From: Octopus bimaculoides
Lineage: Eukaryota
Direction: 5' to 3'
DNA length: 41,224 nt
NCBI RefSeq assembly: GCF_001194135.2
Contig: NC_069010.1
Location: 127,654-168,877, forward strand
The notes under the pieces are model-generated. The model ran no database searches and had not been told where the DNA came from. It saw only the letters and a list, made by a program, of their open reading frames with translations. The position numbers and the translations under genes are program-made. Below are positions 4,978 through 40,773 of this stretch, in pieces (position 1 is the first letter of the stretch; the number at the start of each line of letters is the position of its first letter).

Positions 4978-5123
4978 ATGTCTGCTGTGTAAAAAGAAAG
5001 AACCTATAGTGGAGTTCCAACCATGTGAACACACTGTTATATGCAGAAATTGCTATAAAAATGAGAATGAGCTTAAAACTTGTCCCAAGTGTCAACGAGC
5101 TATAGAAACATGTAGTATACCTG
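4978..5123 (+). CDS. Internal exon encoding a RING-HC (C3HC4) zinc finger; intact copy A (phase 2 in, phase 1 out)
   Basis: Acceptor ttctgttttgttccacag| and donor G|gtaaga. Translation CLLCKKKEPIVEFQPCEHTVICRNCYKNENELKTCPKCQRAIETCSIP gives C-x2-C-x11-C-x-H-x3-C-x2-C-x9-C-x2-C. The F.PC.H..C..C spacing is typical of IAP/MIB/MDM2-type RINGs. Confidence 0.88.
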
Positions 5124-6382
5124 GTAAGAATACAATTTAATGCTCTGTCTGTTTGATTCATTGGCTTTACGATGGTGAATAATGTACTTTATATTGTTGT
5201 GTAGACCCAGGTCTGTCATAAGTTGGCACATTTATGATAAAAGGTGTTCTAGATGTCTTCTCTNNNNNNNNNNCACATTTATGATAAAAGGTGTTCTAGA
5301 TGTCTTCTCTTTGTGATACTATATCAATCCCCCCATCCACTAAATTTTGTCTTCATCCAAGTACAAGGTGTGCTATACTTCAAGAGGTTGCTAAGAGAAA
5401 TATCAATAATATTCCTGGCTTTTATCAGTAAATATTAACTTTTTAATGCCAATTGTGAGTGATTAGAGGTGATTAATGATTTATCAGTATCTTGTGAATC
5501 TGATAGCTATAGACAAAGGTAGTTACAAGAANNNNNNNNNNNNNNNNNNNNNNNNNNNNNNNNNNNNNNNNNNNNNNNNNNNNNNNNNNNNNNNNNNNNN
5601 NNNNNNNNNNNNNNNNNNNNNNNNNNNNNNNNNNNNNNNNNNNNNNNNNNNNNNNNNNNNNNNNNNNNNNNNNNNNNNNNNNNNNNNNNNNNNNNNNNNN
5701 NNNNNNNNNNNNNNNNNNNNNNNNNNNNNNNNNNNNNNNNNNNNNNNNNNNNNNNNNNNNNNNNNNNNNNNNNNNNNNNNNNNNNNNNNATAATTTGTCA
5801 TCTTATGAAGAGCTCCAATAATTACAGTAGTCTGATGTTTGATATGAAATATTTAATTAACACTTACTACAAAGTTTCAATAACATTTACCATCCATATT
5901 TATACTCATTCTTATTGGATTTTAGATTATATTAATGTTAATGCAGGCACAATTTTCTGNNNNNNNNNNNNNNNNNNNNNNNNNNNNNNNNNNNNNNNNN
6001 NNNNNNNNNNNNNNNNNNNNNNNNNNNNNNNNNNNNNNNNNNNNAAAAGAAATTATTGTTAGTATTTGGTACTGGACCTGGTACCATTTTTCTGCGATTC
6101 CTCATGGAACTACCATGATATCAACTGTTTTCAGATACAATCTATATAGATAACTAGCACTCCATCGGTTAGGATGATGAAAGATCCAGTTTTCCTATCA
6201 ATAAAACAGCCTGTTAATGAAATTAACATGAAAGTGGCTGAGTACTCCGAAGACGTGAGTACACTAAATGTAGTTCCCAGGAAGATTCATCATAACACAG
6301 AAGGTGAAAAGGCTGGCCCTTTAAAATATAAGTAGATCTTGTTTTAATCAACTGAATGGATAGCAGCAATATGAAAGAAAGT

Positions 6383-6587
6383 CAGATAATATACAATCTA
6401 TATAGATATCATTATAATGGTGGTCACTCACATATACATTTATCAGATTATATACAAACTATATATTTATAATTACAATGATGGTAACATATCCCTTTGC
6501 CAGATTATATATAATTTATATAGATATCATTATAATGATGGTCACATATCCCTTTGCCAGATTATATATAATCTCTATAGATATCAT
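6383..6587. repeat. 57-bp minisatellite, short allele (~3.6 units), copy A
   Basis: Unit ATCCCTTTGCCAGATTATATATAATCTATATAGATATCATTATAATGATGGTCACAT; same flanks as the long array in copy B. Confidence 0.9.
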
Positions 6588-6594
6588 TTTGGAA

Positions 6595-7075
6595 ACATCA
6601 TCAAAGTATATCTCCCCATGCTCTAGCAAACATGGATTCAGCTAAACTAGAGAGAGCTCCCATTCACAATCTCAACTCAGAATGCAGTGTCAGATTAATC
6701 AACTACAAGTTGAGTTGTTGAGGTACCAAGCAATTCTAATTATCATCTTCTTCTTAAGTTAAACCCAAGTCGGTTGATCTGATTCGAGAGTGCGGGGCAT
6801 TCAGGCAATATAACAAACTTATCAAACCTGGGGGTGAGTGGATACATGACAAACAACTGAATTGAATAATTTGATATATCATGATGTACCGCTTACTAGC
6901 ATCATTGAGGCAGATGCCTATTTCATGGCAGATATACCAGATAAAGAAAAGGTCGGCAGGCTGTATTTAGAAATCATATATGCCAGTGACACTGCTGTTT
7001 CTGTGCCAAAAACCAGCAAGATTNNNNNNNNNNCATCTCAAACAACGTTTATCAAAATCTGTCAATGGAACAATA
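6595..7075 (+). pseudogene. Decayed transposase-like coding remnant, unclassified (also at 29190-29655)
   Basis: Reads SPHALANMDSAKLERAPIHNLNSECSVRLINYKLS*GTKQF...QVKPKSVDLIR with stops. From recall it resembles AP(I/V)HNL..ERSVG.INY segments of transposon-derived proteins in marine invertebrates; not verified by search. Confidence 0.4.
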
Positions 7076-7851
7076 AGTAATAAATTTCAAAATTTACTTG
7101 AATAATGTGAGTTGCAAGACAGACTTAAGCCTTATTGATTTCAGTCATGCATTGGATGACTTGGTGTGAGGTTCTGAAGCCATAAAGGTTGTCAAAGTAT
7201 TATTTATCATATACATTTCAGAACTTCGGAAATGTTTTGTCTTCTGTAAAATTAAATTACTTAATTATTTGTCATTAAACTGCTTATTCCACATTCAATT
7301 CGAGTTCTTTGACGTCAAAAGCATATATAAAGACATCTCATATGACATTCTTGGTAACAACTACTGATTTTGTGAAAAAGATGTGTATCTTGGTCGCCCT
7401 CTTAAATTTGTGCCATATTGTAAAATCAAATTGTAAGACTAATACTATTTTTGGATTCAGCGTATTAAAAGAACCCATGCTAAGCTAAAATCTATATGCA
7501 TAAATGTGTAATGGTGTCTGTCTGTGTGTGTGTTTGGGGTTAATCTAACTCCTCTCGAATCGTCCAACCGATTTTAATGATTTTTGGTACATAGATAGAT
7601 TACATGCCCTGAATTTCAGATAAGGCCAGAATTTTTCGAAAACTCGATAATGCTCAGTTGGCATCGATTNNNNNNNNNNCTCGATAATGCTCAGTTGGCA
7701 TCGATTTTTGTGAGCTCAATCGGGCGTTTCAATGGAAATACCCATAACGATGTTATTATTTTTTGCAGCTTTTGCATTTTTTGGTCCGATTTTGATGAAA
7801 ATCAATGAGTGAGCGAGGCTCATGGCAGTGAGTTGATTTCAGTATATAGTG

Positions 7852-7920
7852 CTAGTCCAACCCATGCCAGCATAGAAAGCTGACGTTAAACGATGATGAT
7901 GATGATGATGATGATGAGTA
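7852..7920 (+). mobile_element. 5'-truncated SINE 3' end with (GAT)n tail, present only in copy A
   Basis: CATGCCAGCATAGAAAGCTGACGTTAAACGATGATGAT matches the tail of the SINE at 22091-22423. The empty site atatagtg|ttgataaaaa is seen in copy B at ~30381. Confidence 0.85.
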
Positions 7921-8174
7921 TTGATAAAAAATCGATAATTGCACCTGATCAGTGGTTATATAAAATCAATAGGCTTTTTGCATGCAAATACCCATAGGGA
8001 TTTTATTTTTGGCCATAACTTTTATATTTTTCNNNNNNNNNNTAATGAAATTTGAGATGTAGGTAAATTTTGTGGTGGGAGAGACGGTAAAGATGTTTAT
8101 TTAATTCAAAAGGGCTTTAAAAGGGGACAAATGCAAATAAGCATTTCCTTAGAGACATTCTTATTGATTTTGTA

Positions 8175-8236
8175 ATGCTGGCATCAACCAATGGACATGA
8201 ACTGTACAGTTCATGTCCATTAGTTGATGCCAGCAT
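8175..8236. repeat. 62-bp loopless palindrome (1 mismatch), copy A only
   Basis: ATGCTGGCATCAACCAATGGACATGAACTGT|ACAGTTCATGTCCATTAGTTGATGCCAGCAT; copy B (~30655-30685) has only the right arm. Confidence 0.85.
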
Positions 8237-10128
8237 GAAGAGTTGACAAAAATCNNNNNNNNNNTCCATTAGTTGATGCCAGCATGAAGAGTTGACAAAA
8301 ATCGATAATTGCACGTGAGTGGGAATTTTAAGAAATCAATAGGCTTTTTGTATGCAATTCCACATTGGATTAATATCTTATGCTGTAACTTTTACAGAAT
8401 TCATCTGATTTTGATGAAATTTAACTTTTAGGAAAAGTTTATCATTGGAGTCATGTAATAGAATTAAAATTAAACTGGTGAAAGGCAGAAATCGTCAAAA
8501 TTCATTCCCAATAAAATAATGAACTGATTTTGAAGAAAATTCACCCATGAGTAGAGTTAAGCACTTCGACATATGAAGCATCGATTATTCATATTGGGAT
8601 TTAAGATGGGATATTTTCATGTAAATGGTCACGTGGATTCTATTTTATGACATAAATTTAACACTTTCTTTCGGATTTTGCTGAGATTGAACACACTGAT
8701 TAATTTTGTACAGAGAGTGGCATTAAGAGGAGAGAAATAAACAAACGTCACTCTCAACAGTTGGAGGTACACCCAAAAGTTTGACTGTGATTTCAGATGG
8801 TCCATTATGATGAAATATGTTGAAAGTGTTAACTGGGTAAAATCCCTGCTGAACCAGATATAACATCTTAATGGGTANNNNNNNNNNNNNNNNNNNNNNN
8901 NNNNNNNNNNNNNNNNNNNNNNNNNNNNNNNNNNNNNNNNNNNNNNNNNNNNNNNNNNNNNNNNNNNNNNNNNNNNNNNNNNNNNNNNNNNNNNNNNNNN
9001 NNNNNNNNNNNNNNNNNNNNNNNNNNNNNNNNNNNNNNNNNNNNNNNNNNNNNNNNNNNNNNNNNNNNNNNNNNNNNNNNNNNNNNNNNNNNNNNNNNNG
9101 TTTATATCATTGTTTTGTGACCCTAGGCACAACTTTTGAGAAGCAATAAAAGATTAAAATAACATTCTCCATACCTGTACATGCATATCTAGTTTATCTT
9201 TAGTGCATTTTAGCCTCATGGTTTCAACATCGACAGACAGNNNNNNNNNNNNNNNNNNNNNNNNNNNNNNNNNNNNNNNNNNNNNNNNNNNNNNNNNNNN
9301 NNNNNNNNNNNNNTCTCGTTTCTTCTTTCAATCCATTTGATATTTCTTTGTATGTTACAACACTTTTTCTGTAGATCTTCAAACAGGGCTAGCAAACCTT
9401 CCTTCTTCTTGGGTCTGGTCAGCTTTCCACTGCTTTTCTAAGTCCTTCTTCTCCCTTCTTAACTGATGCATCTTTTTTTTCTCACCTACTTTCGTCAGAC
9501 TTAGCAGATAACTGCTTCTTGTTACCCTCCATTACATCAAATAACNNNNNNNNNNNNNNNNNNNNNNNNNNNNNNNNNNNNNNNNNNNNNNNNNNNNNNN
9601 NNNNNNNNNNNNNNNNNNNNNNNNNNNNNNNNNNNNNNNNNNNNNNNNNNNNNNNNNNNNNNNNNNNNNNNNNNNNNNNNNNNNNNNNNNNNNNNNNNNN
9701 NNNNNNNNNNNNNNNNNNNNNNNNNNNNNNNNNNNNNNNNNNNNNNNNNNNNNNNNNNNNNNNAAGTATTTATCTGTCTACTGCACTTTGACTCTTAGGG
9801 TGACTTTCTTCATGTTTGATGGTCAAATGACTTACACTGCTTCAATTTCTCCAAATAATTCTTGCCTTGATGGATCTTCAATCCCACTTAGGATTGTCTG
9901 CATCCTGAACCACATCCAGTACCTTCTGTATATAGACCAGTCTTATTTCTGAGCTCATGTCTGTATTCTCTTCAATGACCACAGTAGAAAGTATAGAAAT
10001 ATTGACCAAAACCATAGTGGTCATTAGTTAACCATTGATGATAACCATTATGATATCTCGTAATAATAGAATATTGATTATTAGCAGAAATAATGATACC
10101 ATACTGCAAAGAGAAATATTTATTTCAG

Positions 10129-10200
10129 TGGATCGACATTCAGGGAAGAAAGAAGTCCAGACAACAGAACATCCTTCAGAAAGTAAACTACCGTCAGATG
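10129..10200 (+). CDS. 72-nt symmetric phase-1 linker exon, copy A
   Basis: Acceptor tatttatttcag| and donor G|gtgagt. Open in phase 1: (V)DRHSGKKEVQTTEHPSESKLPSD(G). The phase matches the RING donor, and splice sites and frame are kept in copy B. Confidence 0.75.
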
Positions 10201-11398
10201 GTGAGTATAAAATAACAATTATTAATTGATTTCTGTAAAATTTAGCTACACATGTGTTTTTTTTTNNNNNNNNNNNNNNNNNNNNNNNNNNNNNNNNNNN
10301 NNNNNNNNNNNNNNNNNNNNNNNNNNNNNNNNNNNNNNNNNNNNNNNNNNNNNNNNNNNNNNNNNNNNNNNNNNNNNNNNNNNNNNNNNNNNNNNNNNNN
10401 NNNNNNNNNNNNNNNNNNNNNNNNNNNNNNNNNNNNNNNNNNNNNNNNNNNNNNNNNNNNNNNNNNNNNNNNNNNNNNNNNNNNNNNNNNNNNNNNNNNN
10501 NNNNNNNNNNNNNNNNNNNNNNNNNNNNNNNNNNNNNNNNNNNNNNNNNNNNNNNNNNNNNNNNNNNNNNNNNNNNNNNNNNNNNNNNNNNNNNNNNNNN
10601 NNNNNNNNNNNNNNNNNNNNNNNNNNNNNNNNNNNNNNNNNNNNNNNNNNNNNNNNNNNNNNNNNNNNNNNNNNNNNNNNNNNNNNNNNNNNNNNNNNNN
10701 NNNNNNNNNNNNNNNNNNNNNNNNNNNNNNNNNNNNNNNNNNNNNNNNNNNNNNNNNNNNNNNNNNNNNNNNNNNNNNNNNNNNNNNNACAATGTTTTTG
10801 TTTGTTTTACATTTTTCTGATAGCTTATTGTTGTTGTTCAGCCATATGCCATATTCTGGCATATGAAGACATCCAAATGTCTTCAGCTATTTTTCGACTC
10901 AGGGAATATNNNNNNNNNNNNNNNNNNNNNNNNNNNNNNNNNNNNNNNNNNNNNNNNNNNNNNNNNNNNNNNNNNNNNNNNNNNNNNNNNNNNNNNNNNN
11001 NNNNNNNNNNNNNNNNNNNNNNNNNNNNNNNNNNNNNNNNNNNNNNNNNNNNNNNNNNNNNNNNNNNNNNNNNNNNNNNNNNNNNNNNNNNNNNNNNNNN
11101 NNNNNNNNNNNNNNNNNNNNNNNNNNNNNNNNNNNNNNNNNNNNNNNNNNNNNNNNNNNNNTAAGACAGGAACGACAAAAGCAGAAGGGCATTATTATCA
11201 AGTTGTAATAACTAAATAAGATAATGGCTACAACGATAGGATTATGTAGAATGTGTTACAAGAAGAAAGAGGTTTAGGAAGGTTACTTTATTTTGTTNNN
11301 NNNNNNNNNNNNNNNNNNNNNNNNNNNNNNNNNNNNNNNNNNNNNNNNNNNNNNNNNNNNNNNNNNNNNNNNNNNNNNNNNNNNNNNNNNNNNNNNNT

Positions 11399-24417: not shown

Positions 24418-24560
24418 ATGTCTGCTGTGTGAAAAGAGTGAACCTATAATGGAGTTCCAACCATGTGGACACACTGTTATATGCAGAAATTGCTATTAAA
24501 ATCATAAGCCTAATTCTTGTCCCAAGTGTCAACAAGATATAGCAAAATATAGTATACCTG
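24418..24560 (+). pseudogene. Duplicated RING-HC exon, copy B, with an in-frame stop (TAA 24497-24499)
   Basis: Same acceptor; donor G|gtatga. CLLCEKSEPIMEFQPCGHTVICRNCY*NHKPNSCPKCQQDIAKYSIP; all eight zinc ligands retained; one codon shorter than copy A. Confidence 0.85.
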
Positions 24561-26001
24561 GTATGAATACAATTTAATGATCTGTCTGTTTGTCACATTG
24601 GCTTTACAACGGTGAATAATGTACTTTATATTGTTGTTTAGACCCAGGTTTGTCATAAGTTGGCACATTTATGATAAAAGGTGTTCTAGATGTCTTCTCT
24701 TTGTGATACTATACCAATCACACCATCCACTAAATTTTGTCTTTATCCAAGTACAAGGTGTGCTATACTTCAAGAGGTTGCTGTCTGCAAAAAGAAGACT
24801 TGTGTGGGATACTGGAAGTTAAACAGTGACTAAGAGAAATATCAATAATATTCCTGACTTTTATCAGTAAATATTAACTTTTTAATGTTAATTGCGAATG
24901 ATTAGAGGTGATCAATGATGTATCAGTAACTTGTGAATCTGATAGCTAAAGACAAAGGTAGTTACAAGAACATTAATTTTTGGTAAAATAGGAGAGTCAA
25001 TGAGGAAATCTCAAATGAGAGATTAAGGAACAACATTAGAGACTTCGATTGTTAATTAGGTGTTTTGTGTTGCTATGAATATTTATTTAGTGAAAGGTGT
25101 CATTGATTATTTCAACATATTTTGAAAAGTTGTCCTCCAGAAATTCTCCATAATTTGTCATGTTATGAAGAGCTCCAATAATTACAGTAGTCTGATGTTT
25201 GATATGAAATGTTGTCCCTTGTGGTATGTACCCAGAATATCCCAGATTAGAATATGTATTCTTGTAATAAATAAAAAGAAAATTACAAAATTCACTCAAA
25301 CAATATTAATCATTCAATTATTTTTTATTGAATGTTAAATTAGTATTGAACTGTTGAATGTGTGTTTATGTTTAAACGATGTATTTATATTCACGTTTAA
25401 AATAGACTTCTAGAAACAAAATATGAGTTCCAAATGTAAACTGAACACACAACGCTTTGTTTGTAACTATATTTAATTAACGCTTACTACAAAGTTTCAT
25501 TAACATTTATCATCCATATTTCTAATCACTCTTATTGGATTTTAGATTATATTAATGTCAATGCAGGCACAATTTTCTGTGTATTTTACCTTTTTGTTTC
25601 AGCTCTGAATTGATTCTTATTTTTAAATTAGATCACGGAACCTGGTCATTGTTTTTGACTGATAAACGAAATTATTGTTTGTATTTGGTACTGGACCTAG
25701 TACCATTTTTCTGCAATTCCTCATGGAACTAGCATTATTTCAACTGTTCTCAGATACAATCTATATCGATAACTAGCACTCCATCGGTTAGGATAATGAG
25801 TGAACCAGTTTTCCAATCAATAAAACAACCTGCTAATGAAATTAATGTGAAAGTGGCTGAGTACTCCAAAGATGTGAGTACACTAAATGTAGTTCTCAGG
25901 AAGATTCTGCATAGCACAGGAGGTGAAAAGGCTGGCCCTTTGAAATATAAGTAGAACTTATTTTCATCAACTGAGTGGATAGAAGCAATATGAAATAAAG
26001 T

Positions 26002-28073
26002 CAGATAATATACAATCTATATAGATATCATTATAATGGGGGTCACATATACAGTTATCAGATTATATACAAACAATATATTTTTAATTACAATGATGGT
26101 AACATATCACTTTGTCAGGTTATATATATTCTATATAGATATCATTATAATGATGGTCACCTATCCCTTTGTCATGTTATATACAATCTATATAGATATC
26201 TTTATAACGATGATCACATATCCACTTGTCAGGTTATATACAATCTATATAGATATCATTATAATAATGGTCACATATCTCTTTACCAGATTATATATAA
26301 TCTATATAGATATCATTATAATAATGGTCACACATCCCTTTGCCAGATTATATACAATCTATATAGATATCATTATACTGATGGTCACATATCTCTTAGC
26401 CAGATTATATCCAATCTATATAGATATCATTATGTTGATGGTCAGATATCCCTTTGCAAGATTATATATAATCTATATAGATATCATTATATTGATGGTC
26501 ACATATCCCTTCCCCAGATTTTATATAATCTATATAGATATCATTATATTGATGGTCACATATCCCTTTGCCAGATTATATATAATCTATATAGATATCA
26601 TTACAATGATAGTCATATATCCCTTTGCCAGATTATATATAATCTGTATAGATATCATTATAATGATGGTCACCTATCCCTTTGCCAGATTATATACAAT
26701 CTATATAGATATCTTTATAATGATGGTCAGATATCCCTTTGTCATGTTATATACAATCTGTATAGATATCTTTATAACGATGATCACATATCCACTTGTC
26801 AGGGTATATAGAATCTATATAGATATCATTATAATGATGGTGACATATCTCTTTGCCAGATTATATATAATCTATATAGATATCATTATACTGATGGTCA
26901 CATATCCCTTTGTCAGATTATATACAATGTATATAGATATCATTATAATGATGGTCATATATCCCTTTGCCAGATTATATATAATCTATATAGATATCAT
27001 TATAATGATGGTCACATATCTCTTTGCCAGATTATATAAAATCTATATAGATATCATTATACTGATGGTCACATATCCCTTTGTCAGATTATATACAATG
27101 TATATAGATATCATTATAATCATGGTCATATATCCCTTTGCCAGATTATATATAATCTATATAGATATCATTATAATGATGGTCACATATCTCTTTGCCA
27201 GATTATATATAATCTATATAGATATCATTATAATAATGGTCACATATCCCTTTGCCAGATTATATACAATCTATATAGATATCATTATACTGATGGTCAT
27301 ATATCCCTTTGCCAGATTATATAAAATCTATATAGATATCATTATACTGATGGTCATATATCCCTTTGCCAGATTATATATAATCTATATAGATATCATT
27401 ATACTGATGGTCATATATCCTTTTGCAAGATTATATACAATCTATATAGATATCATTATATTGATGGTCACACAACCCTTTGCAAGATTATATACAATTT
27501 ATATAAATATCATTATACTGATGGTCACATATCCCTTTGTAAGATTATATATAATCTGTATAGATATCATTATATTGATGGTCAAATATCCCTTTGCCAG
27601 ATTATATAAAATCTATATAGATATCATTATAATGATGGTCAGATATCCCTTTGTCAGATTATATACAATGTATATAGATATCATTATAATGATGGTCATA
27701 TATCCCTTTGCCAGATCATATATAATCTATATAGATATCATTATAATGATGGTCACATATCTCTTTGCCAGATTATATATAATCTATATAGATATCATTA
27801 TAATAATGGTCACATATCCCTTTGCCAGATTATATACAATCTATATAGATATCATTATATTGATGGTCAAATATCCCTTTGCCAGATTATATAAAATCTA
27901 TATAGATATCATTATACTGATGGTCACATATCCCTTTGCAAGATTATATACAATCTATATAGATATCATTATATTGATGGTTACATATCCCTTTGCCAGA
28001 TTATATATAATCTATATAATCTATATAGATATCATTATATTGATGGTCACATATCCCTTTGCCAGATTATATA
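26002..28073. repeat. 57-bp minisatellite, long allele (~36 units before the Helitron)
   Basis: 57-bp period, which is the 19-aa period YPFARLYIIYIDIIIMMVT of ORF 26036-28231; variant units recur at 171-bp and 570-bp offsets. Confidence 0.97.
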
Positions 28074-29056
28074 TCTATATATATAAAAATGAGAATGTGT
28101 GTCTGTCTGTCTGTCTGTCTGTCTATGTGTGTGAATCCCTAAAACTCGAGAACTACGCAACCAATTTCATTCAAATTTTACACATGCCTTACTTAGGGTT
28201 CCAGTTGTGTTTTAGTAAAAAAAAATATTAACTTCTTGCAGAGTTCGAGCACACGGCAACATAATATCTCCTCCACTATTAAAGTATTACGTGTCAAAAG
28301 TGAAACAAAAACACTCATGTCAAATACTTTCACTTTAAAAATGAAACTATTCCACTAACTGAAACAATCACATTTCNNNNNNNNNNNGAATGGATCTTTA
28401 TGAAATTTGGAAATTATATTCTTTGCATAACGGCCATAACTCCCATGAAAATTCATATATTTTTGATGTTGATGAAATATTAACCCGAACATAACAGATG
28501 AGCATTTTTTAGAAAATGATGTCACACGTTATCGAGGCTACCATTCTTTCTGGATGTGCAAAAGGGGATGACGTCTTTATTCCAAGAATTCCTCTTACTC
28601 TATCAGGAGCAGACATTCCTTTTACATTTAGAAGACTACAATTCCCCCTTCGTGTGACTTTTGCCATGTCCATAAACAAACCTCAGGGTCAAATACTGTC
28701 TGTAGCTGGTCTTCTCTTGGAAGAGCCCTGCTTCTCACATGGCCAACTGTATGTTGGCTGCTCAAGAGTGGGCATCAAAAAAAAACCTATTTGTATATGC
28801 TCCACAAGGGTAAACAAGGAACATTGTTTACAACGAGGTGTTATAATCACAACAGCAAGAAAGTATGTACATGATCACCTTCTTTTACGAAACTTCATTG
28901 ACTTTCATATATTTATATTGATATACATATACATACGTGTGTTTGGGTGCGTGTGTGTATATACATCTCTATATATAAAGATGATGCGTAGTCTGGACGG
29001 CGTTTTTAGATTTCATTATTCTCTTTAACCCGGGCAACGCCGGGTATTTCTGCTAG
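28074..29056 (+). mobile_element. Young non-autonomous Helitron (983 bp) inserted in the minisatellite
   Basis: 5' TC (28074-28075) and 3' hairpin ACCCGG-GCAACG-CCGGGT (29028-29045) followed by CTAG (29053-29056). Inserted between A28073 and T29057 with no target-site duplication; removing it restores the unit CCAGATTATATA^TAATCTATATAG. Confidence 0.95.
28516..28790 (+). pseudogene. Helitron RepHel Pif1-helicase C-terminal fragment
   Basis: HVIEATILSGCAKGDDVFIPRIPL...FTFRRLQFPLRVTFAMSINKPQGQ...FSHGQLYVGCSRV corresponds to Pif1 motifs V/VI. Confidence 0.92.
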
Positions 29057-29189
29057 TAATCTATATAGATATCATTACAATGATAGTCATATATCCCTTT
29101 GCCAGATTATATATAATCTGTTTAGATATCATTATATTGATGGTCACATATCCCTTTGCCAGATTATATATAATCTTTATAGATATCAT
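29057..29189. repeat. 57-bp minisatellite, ~2.3 units continuing after the Helitron
   Basis: Same unit, in register with the array before the insertion. Confidence 0.95.
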
Positions 29190-30062
29190 TTTGGAAACAT
29201 CATCAAAGCGTCTCCCCATGCTCTAGCAAACATGGATTCGGCTAAACTAGAGAGAGCTCCCATTCACAATCACAACTCAGAATGCAGTGTCGGATTAATC
29301 AATTACAAGTTGAGTCGTTGAGGTGGCAAGCAATTCAAATGACCATCTTCGTCTCAAGTTAAACCCAAGTCGGCTGATCTGATTCGAGTGTCCGGGGCAT
29401 TCAGGTAATGTAACAAACTTATCAAACCTGGGGGTGAGTGGATACATGACAAACAACTAAATTGGATAATTTGATATATCATGATGTACAACTTACTAGC
29501 ATCGTTGAGGCAGATGCCTATTTCATGGCAGATATACCAGATAAAGAAAAGAACAGCAGGCTGTATTTAGAAATGCCAATGACACTGCCGTTTCTGTGCC
29601 AAAAACAAGCAAGATTTCCATCTCAAACAACGTTTATCAAAATCTCGCAATGAAGCCATAAGTAATAAATTTCAAAATTTAATTGAATAATGTGAGTTGC
29701 AAGACAGACTTAAGACTTATTGATTTGAATCATACGTTGGATGACTTGGTCTGAGGTTCTGAATCCATAAAGGTTGTCAAAGTATTATTTATCATATAAC
29801 TTTGGGACTTCGGAAATGTTTTTCCTTCTGTAAAATTAAATTACTTAATTATTTGTCATTAAACTGTTTATTCCACATTCAATTCGAGTTCTTTGACTGC
29901 AAAAGCATATATAAAGACATATCATATGACATTCTTGGCAACAACTACTGATTTTGGGAAAAAGATGTGTATTTTGTTCTCCCTCTTGAATTTGTGCCAT
30001 ATTGTAAAACTAATACTATTTTTGGATTCAGCTTATTAAAAAAAAACCGTGCTAAGCTAAAG

Positions 30063-31376
30063 TCTATATGCATAAATGTGTAATGGAGTCTGTCTGTGTG
30101 TGAGTTTGGGGTTAATCTAACTTCTGTCACATCGTCCAACCAATTTTAATGATTTTTGGCACATAGATTACATACCCTGAATTTCAAATAATGCCAGAAT
30201 TTTTCGAAAACTCGATAATACTCATTTGGCATAGATTTTTGTGAGCTCAATCGGATGTTTGAATGGAAATACCCATAACGATGTTATTTTTTCCTGCAGC
30301 TTTTGCTTTTTGTTTGTCCAATTTTGATGAAAATTGATGAGTGATCGAAGCTCATGGCAGTGAGTTGATTTCAGTATATAGTGTTGATAAAAAATCGATA
30401 ATTGTGCCTGATCAGTGGTTATATAAAATCAATAGGCTTTTTGTATGCAAATACCCATAGGGATTTTATTTTTGGCTGTAACTTTTATATTTTTCATCCA
30501 ATTTTAATGAAATTTGAGATGTAGGTAAATTTTGTGGTAGGGGAGATGGTAAAGATGTTTATTTAATTCAAAAGGGCTTTAATAGGGCACAAATGCAAAT
30601 AAGTATTTCCTTAGAGACATTCTTATTGATTTTGTAGAAATTTTACACATGATTACAGTTCATGTCCATTAGTTGATGCTAGCATGAAGAGTTGACAAAA
30701 ACCAATAATTGCACATGAGTGGGGATTTTAAGAAATCAATAGGTTTTTTGTATGCAATTCCTCATAGGATTAATATCTTATGCTGTAACTTTTACAGAAT
30801 TCATCCGATTTTGATGAAATTTAACATTTAGGAAAAGTTTATCGTTGGAGTCATGTAGAATTAAAAGTAAACTGGTGAAAGGCAGAAATCGTCAACATTC
30901 ATTCACAATAAAATAATGAACTGATTTTGAAGAAAATTGACCCATGAGTAGAGTTAAGCACTTCGACATATGAAACATCGATTATTCATATAATGTATTG
31001 GGATTTAAAATGGGATATTTTCATGTAAATGGTCACGTGGATTCTATTGTATGACATAAATTTAACATTTTCCTTCGGATTTTGCTGAGATTGGACACAC
31101 TGATCAATTTTGTACAGAGGGTGGCATTAAGAGGAGAGAAATAAACGTTGCTCTCAACAGTTGGAGGTACACCCAAAAATTTGACTGTGATTTCAGATGG
31201 TCCATTATGATGAAATATGTTGAAAGCGTTAACTGGGTAAAATCCCTGCTAAACCAGATATACCATCTTAATGGGTAATAGTTGGTACGGGGAAAGTAGA
31301 AGATTTCAATACTAGGTCAGAGGTAGGCTTAACTTCAACACGGAAAACATGAGCAAATGCCAGGTCCAACAGCTAG
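30063..31376 (+). mobile_element. Old non-autonomous Helitron-like element, copy B
   Basis: 5' TCTATATGCATAAATG. The 3' end ACATGAGCAAATGCCAGGTCCAACAGCTAG|T looks like a degraded version of the young Helitron end ACCCGGGCAACGCCGGGTATTTCTGCTAG|T. It is shared with copy A, so it predates the duplication. Confidence 0.55.
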
Positions 31377-32507
31377 TAGTATATATTTACGTACACTATA
31401 AGGTTTTGGATTGATTAAATTAGTATTTACTTCTATATTTTCTAGGTTTCTAACTTCAAGCAGTATATACAGCTGGGTTGCCAAAATCGAAATCGAAAAA
31501 AAAAAAAAAACGTTTATATCATTGTTTTGTGACCCTAGGCACAACTTTTCAGAAGCAATAAAGGATTAAAATAACATCCTCCATACCTGTGCATGCGTAC
31601 CCAGTTTATCTTTAGTGCATTTTAGCCTCATGGTTTCAACATCGACAGACAGCATCCTCATGACTTCATAAGCAGTCTTGAGGAACTACTCTTTCATCCA
31701 TTTAATCTCGTTTCTTCTTTCAATCCATTTGATATTTCTTTGTATGTTACAACACATTTTCTGTAGATCTTCAAACAGGGCTAGCAAACCTTCCTTCTCC
31801 TTGGGTCTGGTCAGCTTTCCACTGCTTTTCTAAGTCCTTCTCCCTTCTTAACTGATGCATCTTTTTTTCTCTCCTACTTTCGCCAGACTTAGCAGATAAC
31901 TGCTTCTTGTTACCCTCCATTACATCAAATAACTCAACACTTATGTCGTAGATGGTGATTGCAAGCTTATTCAGCTTAACTCTTGTTTCCCCCATCCTTT
32001 TTATGGAGCATTTTGCATACTTTCCCTTTGAGGGACCTGTCACTAGCCTTATAATTTGCAGCTGACCACTAATTATTTCGTTTCTTTATCATCTCATCTA
32101 GCAAAGAGGCATCTTGACCTAAAGATCATGAAGGCGTTTCAGCTGAAGTATTTATCTGTCTACTGCACTTTGACTCTTAGGGTGACTTTCTTCATATTTG
32201 ATGGTCAAATGACCTACACTGCTTCAATTTCTCCAAATAATTCTTGCCTTGATGGATCTCCAATCCTACTTAGGATTGTCTGCACTCTGAACTACATCCA
32301 GTCTCTTCTGTATAACTTTAAACCAGTCTTATTTCTGAGCTCATGACTGTATCCTCTTCAATAACCACCTTAGAAAGTATAGAAATAATGACCAAAACCA
32401 TAGTGGTCACTAGTTAACCATCGATGATAAGATGTCTCATGTTAATAGAAGATAGATTATTAGCAGAAATAATGATATCATACTGCAACGAGAAATATTT
32501 ATTTCAG

Positions 32508-32579
32508 TGAATCCACATTCAGAGAACAAAGGAGTCCAGGCATCAGCACATCCTTCAGAAAGTAAACTACTGCCAGATG
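32508..32579 (+). CDS. 72-nt symmetric phase-1 linker exon, copy B
   Basis: Acceptor tatttatttcag| and donor G|gtgagt; open frame (V)NPHSENKGVQASAHPSESKLLPD(G). Confidence 0.72.
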
Positions 32580-32907
32580 GTGAGTATAAAATAACAAGAA
32601 TTAAGTGATTTCTGTAAAATTTAGCTACACATGTTTTTTTTCTTTCTTTGTTTCTCAGATTGACTAAAAATAGGTTCCTTTCCTAATTTCCAATTGAGTG
32701 GTTGGCAGTAAATATTGAAGTATTTACTGAAATTTCATAAAATAACCTCTCAGTTTAGCAATAGTAATATGGATAAATTAGTTGAGACAATATTGGTAAT
32801 ATTATGTTTTCGAAAAGGGAAGTGAGATACAATGTTGATTAGGAGTAAACAAGTGAGATAATAACAATGTTGTTATTGTATGTTGTTGTAAGGGGTAAGC
32901 AAATGAG

Positions 32908-33254
32908 TTACTCTTTTACTCTTTTACTTGTTTCAGTCATTTGACTGCGGCCATGCTGGAGCACCACTTTTAGTCGAGCAAATCGACCCCAGTACTTATT
33001 CTTTGTAAGCCTAGTACTTATTCTATCGGTCTCTTGTGCCGAACAGCTAAGTTATGGGGACATAAACACACCAGCATCGGTTGTCAAGTGGTGTTGGGGG
33101 AACAAACACAAACACACAAATATATATACGACGGGCTCCTTTCAGTTTCCATCTACCAAATCTACTCACAAGCTTTGGTCGGCCTGAGGCTATAGTAGTA
33201 GACACTTGTCCAAGGTGCCACGCAGTGGGACTGAACCTGGAACCATGTGGTTGG
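32908..33254 (-). mobile_element. SINE (octopus-type interspersed repeat)
   Basis: TTACTCTTTTACTTGTTTCAGTCATTTGACTGCGGCCATGCTGGAGCACC...GCCGAACAGCTAAGTTATGGGGAC...CCAAGGTGCCACGCAGTGGGACTGAACC, recalled as an abundant octopus SINE; a homologous fragment is at 11399-11488. Confidence 0.8.
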
Positions 33255-34481
33255 ACAATGTTTTTGTTTGTTTTACAATTTCTGATGGGTTATTTTTGTT
33301 GTTGTTCAACCAGATGTCATAATCTGACAGACATATGATGAAAAGTGTTCCAAAAGTAAATTCCATGTGTTTTTCTCACTGATAGTAAATCTCATATTGC
33401 ATCCGTTGTCTTTGTCCAAGCACAAGAGTTTCGTTTGATGCTTGGATAACCATAGTGTCTTTCTCTCTCTCGCTTCAAGATAGGTACTGGCTACAAGATT
33501 CAATACAATCAATGAAACTTCTGGGCAAATACAAGATCTGGTGATTGCAGCTTGGTCTATATCCTGATCTTCTTTATGTTTATTTGAGACTCAGTTCTTG
33601 TGTACCATTTAAAGTATTTTCAGTGCATTAAGGTGGGAATGAAGAAAGATGTGTAGTTGATGAAGTTTCGTGCAATTATACTGAAGTATTTTGGGATACC
33701 TGTCATTATCTTCTGCTCCACCTAGGTAGAGTTATTAAGGAGGATGTATGACATCCAAATATTTTTTGATTCAGAGGACATAGTGTTGACTTGTGATGGG
33801 GTACAATTAGAATAAACGATTACAGGCAGCAACCTTCATTAAAGAGTTCAGGTGTATGTTTATCCTAGTTGAAGTGGTGTGTCCTGAGATATTGTGGCTA
33901 GATCTTTGGAGGATTGACTGGATTGACATTCGAATTAAGCTGCAAATTAGAAGAATGTTGGTTACTGAATTCTAGAGGTGAGAGGCGAAAGCCATGTTGT
34001 TGATTTGGTAAAACTAGAAAAGTATTTTCACCAAGTAGTGATAAAGAAGATGATTGCTATATTGTTAGGATTATGTAGAGAGAAGAGGTTTAGGAAGGTT
34101 AGTCTATTTTGTGGTGGTACTACTGTAGAAAATATTAAAATGGTGTCAAAAAGTACATTGGTCACCAGTTGACCATGGATCAGAGGAATATCTTACGATA
34201 CTAAAATACTAGCTAGACTCGTAAAAAATTTACAGAAAATATAAAAAATGTAAGCATCTGTAAATTGTGTGCTGGTGCCATGAGAAATGTTTCTATAATG
34301 TGACAGTCACAGAATACAGAAAGAAGCGTAAATCTGGTGACCGGTAAATCACAAGAAAAAAAGTCACAGTAATAAAGTCAAAATTTTTGCTAGTTAAAAG
34401 AGTCACAATTTATGGGACGCAGACAAAACCTCCGCAGGACAAAACCCATTCAGACAACCCTTTCATTTGCCTTTGCATTGT

Positions 34482-35221: not shown

Positions 35222-35293
35222 AGAGTTTAAAGCTGAAGGAGAAGAATCTTGTGAGAGTGGTTGAGAGGTTAGGAAGTAATTGGTGGCAAGTGG
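35222..35293 (+). CDS. Death domain exon 1 (72 nt, phase 1-1)
   Basis: Acceptor atttatttcag| and donor G|gtgagt. (E)SLKLKEKNLVRVVERLGSNWWQV(G) has the L..LG..W..(L/V)G pattern of Death-domain helices 1-2 and joins in frame to 40565. Confidence 0.85.
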
Positions 35294-37115: not shown

Positions 37116-37629
37116 GAGGAGGAGAGGCCTCACACTATTTCAGGCATTGCCATGTGATGATACCAAGCAACCGAAATGGAGATCTTCTAAAGGGTCCCTG
37201 AAGTAATGTTACTCAAAAGGATGCACACTGCTCAGAGATCTGGGAGTTTCTCCAGGCTGGGCCACTAAATCTCCACAGCTCTGGTTCTACAGATATCAAA
37301 TAAGAATGTTGCAGGAAAGAACTGCAAAATAGATTCATCAAGTTGAGCCAAGTGGCAGCAGACTTAGGGTTAGACTGCGAACTAGGTGGTTGGATAATAT
37401 CTACAGCCTTAATTGGTCATGGTTGTGAATCTAGCCACCAAGTCTAATGATAGTTGCTTTTGATAGGGCTTTATGTTGGAAGTACCTGAGTACCCACCCA
37501 GGAATAGAAAGCAAAGAAAACAGAACAGGGGCTCAAATAGTAACACTTTTGTCTACACACACACACACACACACACTTTTCCTGCTATCTATTTACCATA
37601 AATTTTCTCAATAATTGTCAGTTACTTTC

Positions 37630-40160
37630 CTTTGTAACTGGTGATTTCAATGAACATGTCGGGCAGCAAGCAGGTGTCTTCCATAGGGTCCATAGGGGCC
37701 ATGGAATTGGTTCCCAAAGTGAGAAAGGAACAAGGTTGTTGGTGTTCTGTGATACAAATGACCAACTGATTTGAAACACCAACTTCAGAAAGCCAGCTAG
37801 TCACCTGAAAACCTATAAATCTGGTGACTATGCTAGCAAGATTGACTACATTCTCATTAGAAAGGTGTAATCATGGTTGCTCATAAATGCAAAGTCCTTC
37901 CCTGGAGGGGATTGTACCCCTCAGCATGGGTTATTTACTAGTGTCTTCAAGTTGGTGGCACAAAGGATTCCAAGAAGCAAGCTAGTTTGGAAAAGAAGGA
38001 TATGGAAGCTTAAGGATTCTTTGAATAGTCAGAGATTTAGAGATGTCATAACTAAAGCATTTGATGAGAAGGAGGAGGGGCTACATCATTGCAAAATAGA
38101 AGATAACTACAGGTTTCTATGAGAGAGTTTACTGCAAGTCACAGACCAAATTTGTAGTTTATGCCAAGTCCAAACCAGGTCTAAAGTGACATGGTGGTGG
38201 AACAGTTAGTTTACAGGGCTATTAGAAACAGGCTTGGAAGGACTGGAAGGATGGTGGCAGCAAAGAGTTATATCAGGCAGCAAGAAGGGAAGCTAAGAAG
38301 CAGGGATACTTAGCCAGAAGGGAAGCAGAAAGGAAGACGTTTGCCAATGTCTTACAAGACAGTATGCCAGGGGAAAATGGTGTGTTGTTGGAGAGAAGTG
38401 TATTTGCATTGACATTGATTCTCTTGCAGTTAGTGACTCTGCAAAGATAGAAGCTTGGAAGTGCCACTATGAAAGGCTACTAAATGTAGAGAATGCATGG
38501 GAGGAGGAGTGTGTGCCTAATGTGGATCCAACAGAAGGACCAGCAATCCGAATAGGTAGTAACATGGTAGCTAAAGCCATGAAGGATATGAAGATCAGCA
38601 AAGACCTTGGCCCATCAGGGATAACCACTGAGATGCTTAAAAATTCTGGCAGTGTGGGTTATGCTCTAGTCACCCATAGTGTAAATCAGGTGGTTCATGA
38701 AGGAGCCATACCCAATGACTGGTGTAGCAGCACCATGGACAACTGCTAGAAAAGCAAAAGTGATGCCTTAGATAGAAATAATTACAGAGGTATCTAATTG
38801 CTGGATCAGGTGATAATAGTTATAGAGAGGATCGTAGCCCAACTAATTAGGGGGAGAGTTAGTCTAGATGTGATGCAGTTTGGTTTTGTGTCAGGGTGAA
38901 CTGCAAGAGAAATACATAACCAAAGAAAAACCTCAATACTTGTCTTTTGCTGAGATGGAGAAAGCCTTCAACAGGGTTCCCCACTCCCTTATCTGGTGAT
39001 CAATGTGGAAGGCATGGATAGAGGAATGGTTGGTGATAGTTGTACAAGCCATGTACAGGAATGCTGTTAATAAGGTGAGGGTTGGCAACGAGTATAGTGA
39101 TGAATTGAGGGAACAAGTAGAAGTTCACTAAGGATTGGTCCTCAGCCCCCATTTGTTCATAATAGTCCTCCAGGTAATATCAGAGGAATTTAAGATAGGC
39201 TGCCCCTAGGAGCTCCTCTATGTTGATGACCTTGTTCTTATAATCATATCATTTCCATAACTAAAGAAATTTCAGGTGTGGAAGCAAGGTATAGAATCAA
39301 GGAGCCTTAGAGTTAATCTAGCAAAAATGAAAGTCTTAGTAAGAAGGAACACAGACAAATCACAAGGCCCTTTATGTAGATGACCCTGCTAGATCTGTAG
39401 AAAAAGCATATGTAGAAACTCCATAGGATGTACCCAATGTTAGCTATGGACACATAAGAGGTGCAGCAATATCAGAGGAGGGTTAACAGGGAAAATAGAT
39501 TTTGTGTGTAGAATGCGCACAGATTCAATAAACTCTAAAAATGTACAGAAAATAGATTCCATCAAATGGCAGGGCAAATGCTTATAAGTAGTGTATAGCT
39601 TCCGTTATCTGGGTGACCAAGTCAGCAGTGGAGGTGGGTGCTCTGAAAATATAGCTGCTCGAATAAGAATAGACTGGGTAGTGTTCAGAGAGCTCCTACC
39701 TCTGTTGGTAACAAAAGGCCTCTCCATCCATGTTAAAAGAAGACTGTATGATGCTTATGTGCAAACGGCCATACTACACAGCAGTGAAACACAGGCTGTG
39801 ACTCCCGAAGACATGTGTAGGCTTGAAAGAAATGAATCTAGTATGCTTTGGTGGATGCACAATGTCAGTATGCATGTACAACAGAGTGGTGTAAGTTGGG
39901 AGTAAGAGGCATCAGATCTGATGTGCAAGAGAGACGAATGCACTGCTATGGTTATGTGCTGCATATGGATGATGGGAGCCGATGTAAAGAAGTGCCTGTT
40001 TCTAAATGTGGAGGAAACCTGTGGATGGAGTTGACCCAAGAAGACATGGCATGATGTGGTGAAGCATGATCTTCAAACATTGGGCCTCACAGTGGCAATA
40101 ATAAGTGATGGATACCTTTGGCAATATGCCATGTTTGAGAAGACCTCTCAAGCCAAGTAA
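37630..40160 (+). mobile_element. 5'-truncated decayed RTE-type LINE (EN end + RT) in the last intron, sense orientation
   Basis: VTGDFNEHVG, NTNFRKPASHLKTYKSG...IDYIL, NYRGI*LLDQV, MQFGFV, EMEKAFNRV, GLVLSPHLFIIVL, LLYVDDLV (39219-39230), FRYLGDQVSSGGGC, WVVFRELLPLL, RLERNESSMLWWM; many stops. Confidence 0.92.
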
Positions 40161-40564
40161 TATGATTGATCTTTGTGTCACGTAACTAGCACATGTGCCA
40201 GTACTTATTACACCCTTGGAGTGGTTGGCATTATGAAGGGCATTCAACTGTAAAAACCATGCCAAATAAAACTGGAACTGGTTTACCAGTTTCAATTAAA
40301 CTGTCTGACCCATGCGGGCCTGGAAAGCAGGCGCTAAATGATGATGATTATCTTTATACCTTATTTCAACTTTGTTATTTTCTAATCAACATTCTTAGAA
40401 AAAGAGAACACTGTCTTATCTTATTCATTTTTCTTTACTATTTTTTTTAAACATTTCTCTATTGATGTAGTTTCTTTGTTATATTTATTAAAACCTGAGG
40501 TTCATATCTTTCATATTATTGTTAATCTCGTTGCAATTATTTTTTCTTCTTGTATCTTTGGCAG

Positions 40565-40773
40565 GTGTGTTCTTAGGAGTGAAATTTATTGAGATAGAAA
40601 TTATCAAGCATGACTTTCCCTTCGACACAATAGAACAGAGCTTCCAGATGCTCCTCAAATGGTATACACATTGTAATCCAGAGGAATGTACATTCAAAAT
40701 ACTCAGAGAAGCCCTTGAAACTGTTGAGTGCTTTGATGCCCTCGGATGCCTATTAGAGGGAATTTCTACGTAA
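40565..40773 (+). CDS. Death domain exon 2 (probable last coding exon)
   Basis: Long pyrimidine tract ending tctttggcag|. Phase 1 gives (G)VFLGVKFIEIEIIKHDFPFDTIEQSFQMLLKWYTHCNPEECTFKILREALETVECFDALGCLLEGIST*. The I..I..D.P....EQ..QML..W...T...L..AL pattern fits Death-domain helices 3-6. A possible donor c|gtaaat at the stop cannot be excluded. Confidence 0.88.

What the first reader, a model, noticed from the sequence alone, without database searches (positions are those of the whole stretch)
4978..40773. A RING-linker-Death-domain gene built by internal exon-cassette duplication
Seen: five exons chain in frame by splice phase: RING (ends phase 1), 72-nt linker A, 72-nt linker B, 72-nt Death exon 1, Death exon 2 with stop. 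None appears as a complete ORF in the six-frame track. Established: RING-HC domains are E3 ligases and Death domains are homotypic signalling adaptors in apoptosis and innate immunity. Inference: this is the 3' end of a lineage-expanded ubiquitin-ligase/adaptor gene, possibly of Mind-bomb-like ankyrin-RING type, whose RING+linker module was doubled inside one transcription unit. I found no upstream-type exons between the two copies, although gaps could hide some.
Basis: partly seen in the sequence, partly recalled or inferred. Interest (0 to 1): 0.72.

Follow-up and report, generated by a model that had tools for sequence, protein, structure and literature searches.

The report
Live RING gene beside decayed copy
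The window holds two tandem copies of the 3' part of an octopus ankyrin-RING-linker-Death-domain gene; the upstream copy is transcribed and splices to an exon hidden in an assembly gap, the downstream copy that carries the Death exons has stop codons and no RNA, so the proposed five-exon gene does not exist as an mRNA.

Summary
The window is Octopus bimaculoides chromosome CM046630.1. All five exons are present with AG/GT borders and chain in frame, and Pfam finds a RING and, marginally, a Death domain. They belong to two tandem copies of about 11 kb.

- **Copy A (1-11297)** has an intact ankyrin-tail exon, RING exon and linker exon. RNA contigs confirm the joins tail>RING>linker.
- **After linker A**, all five RNA runs continue into AAGCAGAGG... 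(reads EAEDKEELQV). This is neither linker B nor Death exon 1. Comparison with O. sinensis places this cassette exon in the gap 11298-11397.
- **Copy B (22430-34151)** has three TAA stops in its tail and RING exons, a weakened splice donor, a 3.2-kb deletion and no upstream ankyrin exon. It chains in frame into the two Death exons.
- **Expression of B:** neither its RING exon nor Death exon 2 appears in RNA contigs of this species.

The best reading is a live gene A with an unassembled 3' end, followed by a 5'-truncated, decaying copy B. The family itself is real. It is an Octopus-expanded set of ankyrin-RING-(0 to about 5 short cassette exons)-Death proteins that RefSeq names "MIB2-like". The cassette exons arose by duplication of the unit that holds Death exon 1.

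The parts
1..11297 (+). Duplicated segment, copy A (expressed). It runs off the window's left edge into a 5.5-kb gap.
   Evidence: Self-BLAST against 22734-34112 gives 68-96% identity. It is colinear with O. sinensis contig L003 27809-39284 at 77-92%.
986..1161 (+). Ankyrin-tail exon A (FCKMLNLQ...ELFPS), intact.
   Evidence: It matches P0002 at 100%. The mRNA loose end before 4978 equals its last 30 letters. The donor is gtaagt.
4978..5123 (+). RING exon A, a complete C3HC4 RING.
   Evidence: Pfam zf-C3HC4_3 scores 28.8 bits. The exon is held at share 1.00 by 14 RNA-labelled runs of this species. RNA contigs cover 4978-5122 with 0 mismatches.
10129..10200 (+). Linker cassette exon A, 72 nt, phase 1/1.
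   Evidence: The joint 5122/3 > 10128/9 (GT..AG) is seen in 4 of 4 runs. Downstream it joins AAGCAGAGGACAAGGAAGAGCTGCAAGTGG in 5 of 5 runs.
11162..11397 (+). Upstream flank (11162-11297) and assembly gap (11298-11397) that should hold the next cassette exon of gene A (reads ..EAEDKEELQV..).
   Evidence: 11162-11297 matches L003 38611-38746 at 89%. That stretch ends 151 nt before the O. sinensis cassette exon at 38897-38950, AEDKEEKQV. A low-depth pre-mRNA contig runs 173 nt past 11297 into the gap. The 30-mer is absent from the window and both 10-kb flanks.
22430..34151 (+). Duplicated segment, copy B (decayed). It starts about 1.2 kb before the tail exon and lacks any upstream ankyrin exon.
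   Evidence: It is colinear with L003 27518-38784, with a 3.2-kb deletion relative to both A and L003. tblastn finds no ankyrin exon between the copies.
23679..23854 (+). Pseudo ankyrin-tail exon B, with TAA at 23772 and 23835. The donor has degraded from gtaagt to gtttgg.
24418..24560 (+). Pseudo RING exon B, with TAA at 24497 between the 6th and 7th zinc ligands and a 3-nt deletion.
   Evidence: Share of words is 0.00 in 15 RNA-labelled runs of this species, including 6 of those that hold RING A at 1.00.
32508..32579 (+). Linker cassette exon B. Its reading frame and splice sites are intact. It is 86% identical to linker A, and 9 of 24 residues differ.
   Evidence: No joint and no exon-shaped RNA coverage.
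34010..34240 (+). Remnant of the second cassette unit in copy B. The flank is present, but no exon follows.
   Evidence: It aligns at 68% with 11177-11296 and with L003 38352-38784. The sequence after the flank reads as a repeat, not an exon.
35222..35293 (+). Death-domain exon 1, 72 nt, phase 1/1.
   Evidence: Its intron flanks are 69-72% identical to those of the linker exons, while the exon bodies are only 45% identical.
40565..40773 (+). Death-domain exon 2, ending in a stop codon.
   Evidence: The only RNA-labelled runs that hold it are from another octopus species, at shares 0.10-0.13. No contig at 90% identity or more covers it in X45, X49, X52 or X53.

Best explanation
The window holds two tandem copies of the 3' part of one member of an Octopus-expanded family. 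Family members are built as ankyrin repeats, one C3HC4 RING, a variable run of short cassette exons, then a two-exon Death domain.

Shown:
- Copy A is the live gene. An ankyrin exon lies 6 kb upstream of the window, beyond a 5.5-kb gap.
- That exon is followed by the tail exon (986-1161), the RING exon (4978-5123) and the linker exon (10129-10200).
- The mRNA then continues into a further cassette exon and at least 0.5 kb more. None of this is in the assembled letters.

Inferred:
- The cassette exon sits in the gap 11298-11397.
- The rest of A's 3' end, with or without a Death domain, was lost from this draft assembly.
- Copy B is a 5'-truncated duplicate without ankyrin exons or a promoter. 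Its exons still chain in frame as tail-RING-linker-Death1-Death2.
- B carries three TAA stops, a weakened donor, a 3.2-kb deletion and a destroyed second cassette, and no RNA is detected. It is therefore a decaying partial pseudogene whose Death exons remain open by chance or recency.

Inferred from domain knowledge: intact family members would work as E3 ligases that a RIPK1-like Death domain recruits into Death-domain signalling complexes.
For: - **Organism and existing models:** the window is O. bimaculoides. NCBI already splits the locus into two models.
- **The duplication and B's lesions:**. B's five exons join in frame with only three stops.
- **RNA for copy A:** RING A is in 14 RNA-labelled runs. 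The joins tail>RING>linker are seen in 4 of 4 runs. Linker A joins AAGCAGAGG... in 5 of 5 runs.
- **The missing exon:** the 30-mer is absent from the window and from 10 kb either side.
- **Gaps and transcription signal:**
  - One pre-mRNA contig spans the gap 10910-11161, with 233 letters between its two sides, so no exon of this mRNA is hidden there.
  - Another contig joins the two sides of the gap 10266-10788.
  - The transcription signal stops before 12600.
- **Synteny:** the O. sinensis contig L003 places the AEDKEE cassette 151 nt after the homolog of 11297.
- **No RNA for copy B:**
- **Family architecture:**
- **Death domain:** the family profile hits the RIPK1 Death domain at E = 2.5e-12.
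Against: - The 3' 0.5 kb of A's mRNA could not be read, because the tools show only 30 loose letters. Whether A ends in a Death domain is unknown.
- Contigs drop rare isoforms, so a minor A>B>Death transcript is not excluded.
- Only some tissues and conditions are sampled, and B could be induced elsewhere.
- Linker B and both Death exons keep intact frames and splice sites.
- A transcript about 92% identical to Death exon 2 is expressed in a sister species.
- The order of the small contigs in copy A rests on draft scaffolding.
Confidence: 0.7

Rival explanations
1. There is one transcription unit in which RING A and linker A are spliced over the dead B exons to linker B and the two Death exons, giving a RING-linker-linker-Death protein.
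For: - The five exons chain in frame with canonical splice sites.
- The duplicated segment in B starts only about 1.2 kb before the tail exon, so B has no promoter or ankyrin exons of its own.
- Paralogs do carry several cassette exons and alternative inclusion is annotated.
Against: - Linker A joins a different exon in 5 of 5 runs.
- Death exon 2 is absent from RNA contigs in which A stands at depth 16-270.
- There is no pre-mRNA signal in 12600-15500, nor across most of 33445-38400.
Confidence: 0.07
2. Copy B with the Death exons is a live, separately expressed gene that yields a short linker-plus-Death-domain adaptor like NCBI model P0001. It would be transcribed from an internal start in tissues or conditions not sampled, for example after immune challenge.
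For: - Linker B, Death exon 1 and Death exon 2 keep their frames and splice sites.
- NCBI predicts such a protein.
- A close homolog is spliced Death1>Death2 in another octopus species.
Against: - No RNA contig holds Death exon 2 or B's RING exon in any indexed run of this species.
- Raw RNA reads show no exon-shaped depth over the Death exons.
- P0001's N-terminus is intron read-through.
- By my own estimate, 93 codons staying open at this divergence is expected about half the time.
Confidence: 0.1
3. Assembly artefact. Copy A's roughly 25 small contigs were scaffolded into the wrong place, or are a divergent haplotype of B, so the tandem arrangement is not real.
For: - Copy A is riddled with gaps.
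- One gap is a false join of overlapping contigs.
- A 256-bp exact duplicate at 11550-11805 and 12312-12567 lies just beyond A's end.
- A's 3' exons are missing, and the window is bounded by large gaps.
Against: - A and B differ by 4-20% in aligned letters and by a 3.2-kb deletion, far beyond what I would expect between alleles.
- Both sequences exist in independent read sets: A in RNA runs, B in run X17 and in related species.
- Pre-mRNA contigs confirm the local order of A's contigs from 5.4 kb to 11.3 kb.
- Even if this rival is true, it does not rescue the five-exon gene.
Confidence: 0.13

Closest known systems
Octopus 'E3 ubiquitin-protein ligase MIB2-like' / 'Death domain-containing protein' RefSeq and UniProt models (e.g. 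XP_014776758, XP_014782788, XP_014784180 in O. bimaculoides; XP_036354722, XP_029652788 in O. sinensis)
   Same: - The exon types are the same: ankyrin-tail exon, single-exon C3HC4 RING, short phase-1/1 cassettes and a two-exon Death domain.
- In the three loci read here (the window, L003 and L004), the cassette-type exons have conserved intron borders (..atatttatttcag / gtgagtat..aaataaca).
- Several members lie on the same 10-Mb chromosome.
   Different: This locus is a pair. One member is expressed but its 3' end is unassembled. The other is a 5'-truncated copy with stops. NCBI annotates them as two short fragments (P0002, P0001) that end or begin in intron read-through.
Mind bomb 2 (MIB2)
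   Same: Both have ankyrin repeats followed by a C-terminal zf-C3HC4_3 RING. MIB2 acts on Death-domain signalling proteins such as RIPK1 and on cFLIP (PMC7815719).
   Different: - No MIB/HERC2, ZZ or Mind-bomb SH3 repeats are seen in the close relatives. Only 2 of 60 relatives, the true MIBs, have the SH3 repeat.
- This family has a single RING.
- It carries its own C-terminal Death domain.
Oyster BIR-DD-RING inhibitor-of-apoptosis proteins (PMC8917759)
   Same: Both are lineage-expanded mollusc families. The oyster IAPs are described as carrying a Death-domain fold and C-terminal RING fingers.
   Different: The oyster proteins have BIR domains rather than ankyrin repeats. No cassette linker array is described for them.
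Death domains of RIPK1, ankyrin-1/2/3 and PIDD
   Same: These are the best solved-structure matches of the family's Death profile (E = 2.5e-12 to 1.6e-7). Ankyrins also combine ankyrin repeats with a C-terminal Death domain.
   Different: There is no kinase domain, no ZU5-UPA and no leucine-rich repeats here. A RING sits between the ankyrin repeats and the Death domain.

Membership tests
RING-HC (Pfam zf-C3HC4_3) E3 ligase domain | Eight zinc ligands in C3HC4 order and spacing within one uninterrupted domain | tested here: met
   Copy A reads C-x2-C-x11-C-x-H-x3-C-x2-C-x9-C-x2-C and scores 28.8 bits against a cut-off of 27. Copy B fails, with a TAA between ligands 6 and 7.
RING-HC (Pfam zf-C3HC4_3) E3 ligase domain | E2-dependent ubiquitin ligase activity | not testable with these tools
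   This needs an in-vitro ubiquitylation assay of the expressed RING.
Death domain (PF00531) | Sequence match to the Death-domain profile over most of its length | tested here: met
   Death exons 1+2 score 23.4 bits against a cut-off of 22.6, which is marginal. A profile of 18 family members hits the RIPK1, ANK3, PIDD, CRADD and FADD Death domains at E = 2.5e-12 to 1e-4.
Death domain (PF00531) | Six-helix bundle fold | not tested
   No structure prediction was run. The sequence evidence was judged sufficient.
Mind bomb (MIB1/MIB2) | N-terminal MIB/HERC2 domains, ZZ finger and Mind-bomb SH3 repeats ahead of the ankyrin repeats | tested here: inconclusive
   About 1.3 kb of gene A's mRNA lies upstream of the window and was not read. 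Relatives whose models begin at a methionine (P0013, P0014, P0156) start with ankyrin repeats. Only 2 of 60 relatives carry PF18346, and those are true MIBs.
Mind bomb (MIB1/MIB2) | Two or three C-terminal RING fingers | tested here: not met
   There is a single RING exon per copy. Most family members have one RING, followed by a Death domain where one is present.
Octopus ANK-RING-cassette-Death family | Tail exon, RING exon, cassette exon(s) with conserved intron borders and a two-exon Death domain, in that order and in frame | tested here: met
   Copy B holds the full series in frame. Copy A holds the first three exons, plus a fourth seen only in RNA. Relatives at 37-62% protein identity share the same layout.
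Unprocessed partial (5'-truncated) duplicate pseudogene, copy B | Disabling mutations in coding exons | tested here: met
   Three TAA stops at 23772, 23835 and 24497. The donor gtaagt has become gtttgg. There is a 3.2-kb deletion and the second cassette is lost.
Unprocessed partial (5'-truncated) duplicate pseudogene, copy B | No 5' exons or promoter of its own | tested here: met
   Homology to the O. sinensis ortholog starts about 1.2 kb before the tail exon. No ankyrin exon lies in 10266-23600. Gaps of 256 and 530 N could still hide one.
Unprocessed partial (5'-truncated) duplicate pseudogene, copy B | No stable transcript | tested here: met
   B's RING exon has share 0.00 in 15 RNA-labelled runs. 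No RNA run of this species holds Death exon 2. Absence from contigs is not proof of absence.

The most novel reading that the evidence does not exclude
The interesting object may be the family rather than this locus.
- Octopus has expanded a clustered set of ankyrin-RING-Death E3/adaptor genes. The spacer between RING and Death is an array of short, phase-symmetric cassette exons.
- These cassettes were born by repeated duplication of the unit that holds Death exon 1. The spacer length varies between paralogs by the equivalent of about 0 to 5 units, and the cassettes are alternatively included.
- The intron borders are more conserved (64-74%) than the exon bodies (44-49%).

That pattern would fit a splicing-regulated, rapidly diversifying linker in an innate-immunity or cell-death ligase family that has not been described in the literature I could search.
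Probability: 0.25. Interest if true: 0.55.

Novelty: new member of a known kind. Interest (0 to 1): 0.3.

Why it matters
- **Annotation:** the two RefSeq fragments at this locus (a 137-aa 'MIB1' and a 141-aa 'PIDD1-like') are artefacts of a draft assembly. One is a live gene cut short by a gap. The other is built on the tail of a decayed duplicate. Neither name describes a real protein.
- **Scanning method:** exons that chain in frame across tens of kilobases in a tandemly duplicated family can belong to different copies. RNA evidence is needed before such chains are accepted.
- **Biology:** the finding points to an Octopus-expanded ankyrin-RING-Death family with a variable cassette linker. 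That family may be worth a dedicated study of cephalopod cell-death and immune signalling.

Tried and rejected
- **Raw RNA reads:** X21-X23 laid on 35100-40900 gave mostly 95-99% matches from repeats and no exon-shaped signal, so they were uninformative for junctions.
- I then used 10100-12050 and 12600-15500. Stretches 12051-12599 and 15501-22400 were never laid.
- **The 30-mer after linker A:** it was absent from the window at up to 3 mismatches and from both 10-kb flanks at up to 5.
- **Hidden Death exons for copy A:**
  - tblastn found no second Death exon in the assembled letters.
  - BLAST found no A/B homology beyond 11296/34112.
- **Paralogous contig:** contigs match B's last intron at about 94.5% and then read (x)RELGLKQIE, a Death-exon-2 type start. 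They could be copy A's own Death exon. The same motif occurs in other paralogs such as P0061, so I did not assign them.
- **Word-index protein searches:** P0003 and P0067 returned almost nothing. The exhaustive search was needed.
- **O. sinensis locus L004:** at 68-84% identity it is a more distant paralog, not the ortholog.
- **Haplotype explanation:** considered and judged unlikely.

Full report
**Source and existing annotation**

The window is Octopus bimaculoides chromosome CM046630.1, positions 127654-168877 of assembly GCA_001194135.2. It is 35.6% G+C and contains 26 gaps. It is bounded by a 5557-N gap upstream and a 2669-N gap downstream.

NCBI already has two short models here:
- P0002 (137 aa, 'MIB1') covers the tail exon, RING A and linker A, then reads through into the intron (GEYKITIIN).
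- P0001 (141 aa, 'PIDD1-like') starts in the intron, then covers linker B, Death exon 1 and Death exon 2.

**Checking the observation**

They chain in frame into a 189-aa product that ends in a stop.
- Pfam gives zf-C3HC4_3 at 28.8 bits and Death at 23.4 bits, both just above their cut-offs.
- The gaps flagged by the scan's program all lie in the intron between RING A and linker A. mRNA contigs join 5123 to 10129 directly.
- The gap at 5264-5273 is a false join, because 37 letters are repeated on both sides of it.
- The gap at 7024-7033 is bridged by pre-mRNA contigs.

**The duplication**

Self-BLAST aligns 3-10265 with 22734-32644 at 80-96% identity. Weaker homology continues to about 11296 and 34112.

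The doubled unit holds three exons, not two:
- Ankyrin-tail exon: 986-1161 in A and 23679-23854 in B.
- RING exon: 4978-5123 in A and 24418-24560 in B.
- Linker exon: 10129-10200 in A and 32508-32579 in B.

Copy B is damaged in several ways:
- It has TAA stops at 23772, 23835 and 24497.
- The RING exon has a 3-nt deletion.
- The tail-exon donor has changed from gtaagt to gtttgg.

Despite this, B's five exons (tail, RING, linker B, Death 1, Death 2) join in frame into one continuous gene body. That makes B the natural owner of the Death exons.

**RNA evidence**

Copy A is transcribed:
- RING A is held at share 1.00 by 14 RNA-labelled runs of this species, from several studies.
- Contigs of four runs show the joint 5122/3 > 10128/9 (GT..AG). 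Just before 4978 they carry the last letters of tail exon A.
- After linker A, five of five runs (X44, X45, X49, X52, X53) continue with AAGCAGAGGACAAGGAAGAGCTGCAAGTGG, which reads D|EAEDKEELQV. This is neither linker B nor Death exon 1.
- The 30-mer is absent from the window and from 10 kb on either side.
- The X44 contig carries 581 nt downstream of linker A, and the X45 contig carries about 1.7 kb upstream of RING A.

Copy B shows no transcription:
- Death exon 2 and its 3' flank are held by no RNA run of this species. They appear only in DNA-type runs and, at lower share, in other octopus species.
- No contig at 90% identity or more covers Death exon 2 in the four runs where A stands at depth 16-270.
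- The linker B to Death 1 region shows no joints.
- B's RING exon has share 0.00 in 15 RNA-labelled runs.

Junction 10200/32508 is therefore contradicted, and 32579/35222 is unsupported. Junction 35293/40565 is seen only in RNA contigs of another octopus species. Those contigs are about 92% identical to Death exon 2, so they come from a homolog.

**Where A's mRNA goes**

- One low-depth pre-mRNA contig spans the gap 10910-11161, with 233 letters between its two sides. No exon of this mRNA is hidden there.
- Another contig joins the two sides of the gap 10266-10788, though the letters between are not resolved.
- The same pre-mRNA signal reaches 11297, and one contig runs 173 nt further into the next gap.
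- Nothing is transcribed in 12600-15500.
- The O. sinensis contig L003, which carries XP_036354722 (P0067), is colinear with both A and B at 77-92%.
  - Its exon after the RING is a 54-nt cassette at 38897-38950 that encodes ATPKAEDKEEKQVAHSAR. The cassette has the same intron borders as the window's 72-nt exons.
  - Window 11162-11297 matches L003 38611-38746 at 89%. That stretch ends 151 nt before the cassette.
- The missing exon therefore belongs in the gap 11298-11397.
- In B, the equivalent flank (34010-34240) is not followed by an exon.
- A's 'extra' 3.2 kb between the tail and RING exons is shared with L003, so B has a deletion there.
- B's homology to L003 starts only about 1.2 kb before the tail exon.
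- The ankyrin exon of gene A lies 6 kb upstream of the window, at L002 2648-2857, and has no counterpart ahead of B.

**The family**

- An exhaustive search with the intact paralog P0003 finds 67 cluster representatives at E of 1e-30 or better.
- All ten of the closest ones that I looked up are from O. bimaculoides, O. sinensis or O. vulgaris.
- Of 60 relatives scanned, 53 have ankyrin repeats and 49 have the RING.
- 26 of the proteins I fetched have both a RING and a Death-like region.
- The RING-to-Death spacer ranges from 3 to 120 residues. That is room for up to about 5 units of roughly 17-24 aa.
- Isoforms of one O. bimaculoides locus differ by 17-18-aa steps.
- Seven models, including P0002, end in the same read-through of the conserved intron start.
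- The linker exon and its flanks are homologous to Death exon 1 and its flanks (E = 4e-27).
- Across cassette types, the flanks are 64-74% identical but the exon bodies only 44-49%.
- A profile of the family's Death region hits the RIPK1 Death domain at E = 2.5e-12, followed by ankyrin-3, PIDD, CRADD and FADD.
- No Mind-bomb hallmark domain is found in the close relatives.
- A Death-domain fold and C-terminal RING fingers within one expanded mollusc family have already been described for oyster IAPs (PMC8917759).

**Conclusion**

The exons and domain calls are right, and cassette duplication is a real theme of the family. The proposed gene, however, mixes two copies.
- The best-supported picture is a live gene A whose 3' end is lost in the draft assembly, followed by a 5'-truncated, decaying copy B that still carries open Death exons.
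- Whether A itself ends in a Death domain could not be determined.
- A minor A-to-Death isoform, condition-specific expression of B, and a scaffolding error remain as lower-probability alternatives.

Noticed in passing
window 26002-28085 (also 6383-6588, 29057-29190; L003 34181-34327): A 57-bp tandem array of about 36 copies sits in copy B's intron and creates a spurious 731-aa ORF. The same unit has only 2-4 copies in copy A and in O. sinensis, so the array expanded in B alone.
   Followed up: partly
window 10117-10128/10201-10217, 32496-32507/32580-32596, 35210-35221/35294-35310; L003 38880-38896/38951-38968: Every cassette-type exon is bordered by nearly the same intron ends (..atatttatttcag and gtgagtat..aaataaca). 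Across cassette types the flanks are 64-74% identical, while the exon bodies are only 44-49%. Seven gene models in two species end in the read-through peptide G-E/G-Y-K/E-I/M-T.
   Followed up: partly
window 11550-11805 and 12312-12567: A 256-bp stretch is repeated at 100% identity 762 bp apart, on either side of a (TA)56 run at 12085-12196. It lies just after the point where copy A's transcription signal is lost. It is probably an assembly artefact.
   Followed up: no
window 1861-2472 (-), 13111-13476 (-), 16640-17508 (+): Transposon fragments are present:
- An LTR-retrotransposon integrase (Integrase_H2C2), in a stretch of A's intron that is colinear with O. sinensis.
- A reverse transcriptase (RVT_1).
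- A Mos1/mariner transposase (HTH_48 plus Transposase_1), in the 11-kb spacer between the two copies.
   Followed up: partly
window 7883-7923, 11404-11489, 32848-33444, 37554-37580: Short interspersed repeats stand at very high depth in RNA contigs (hundreds up to about 1e5), with many chimeric joints. They dominate read-laying output around the gene.
   Followed up: no
window 40360-40565: RNA contigs of this species (depth 9-28) match B's last intron at about 94.5% and then diverge at the acceptor into AAGGGAATTAGGACTTAAACAAATTGAG, which reads (x)RELGLKQIE. This is the start of a Death exon 2 in a close paralog. It is possibly copy A's own unassembled exon.
   Followed up: partly
L004 (O. sinensis CM016887.1 9314600-9349527): A compact paralog has its tail, RING, three cassette-type exons and Death exon 2 within about 7 kb. 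A second Death exon 2 lies on the opposite strand about 7 kb away. The family is therefore clustered in O. sinensis too.
   Followed up: partly
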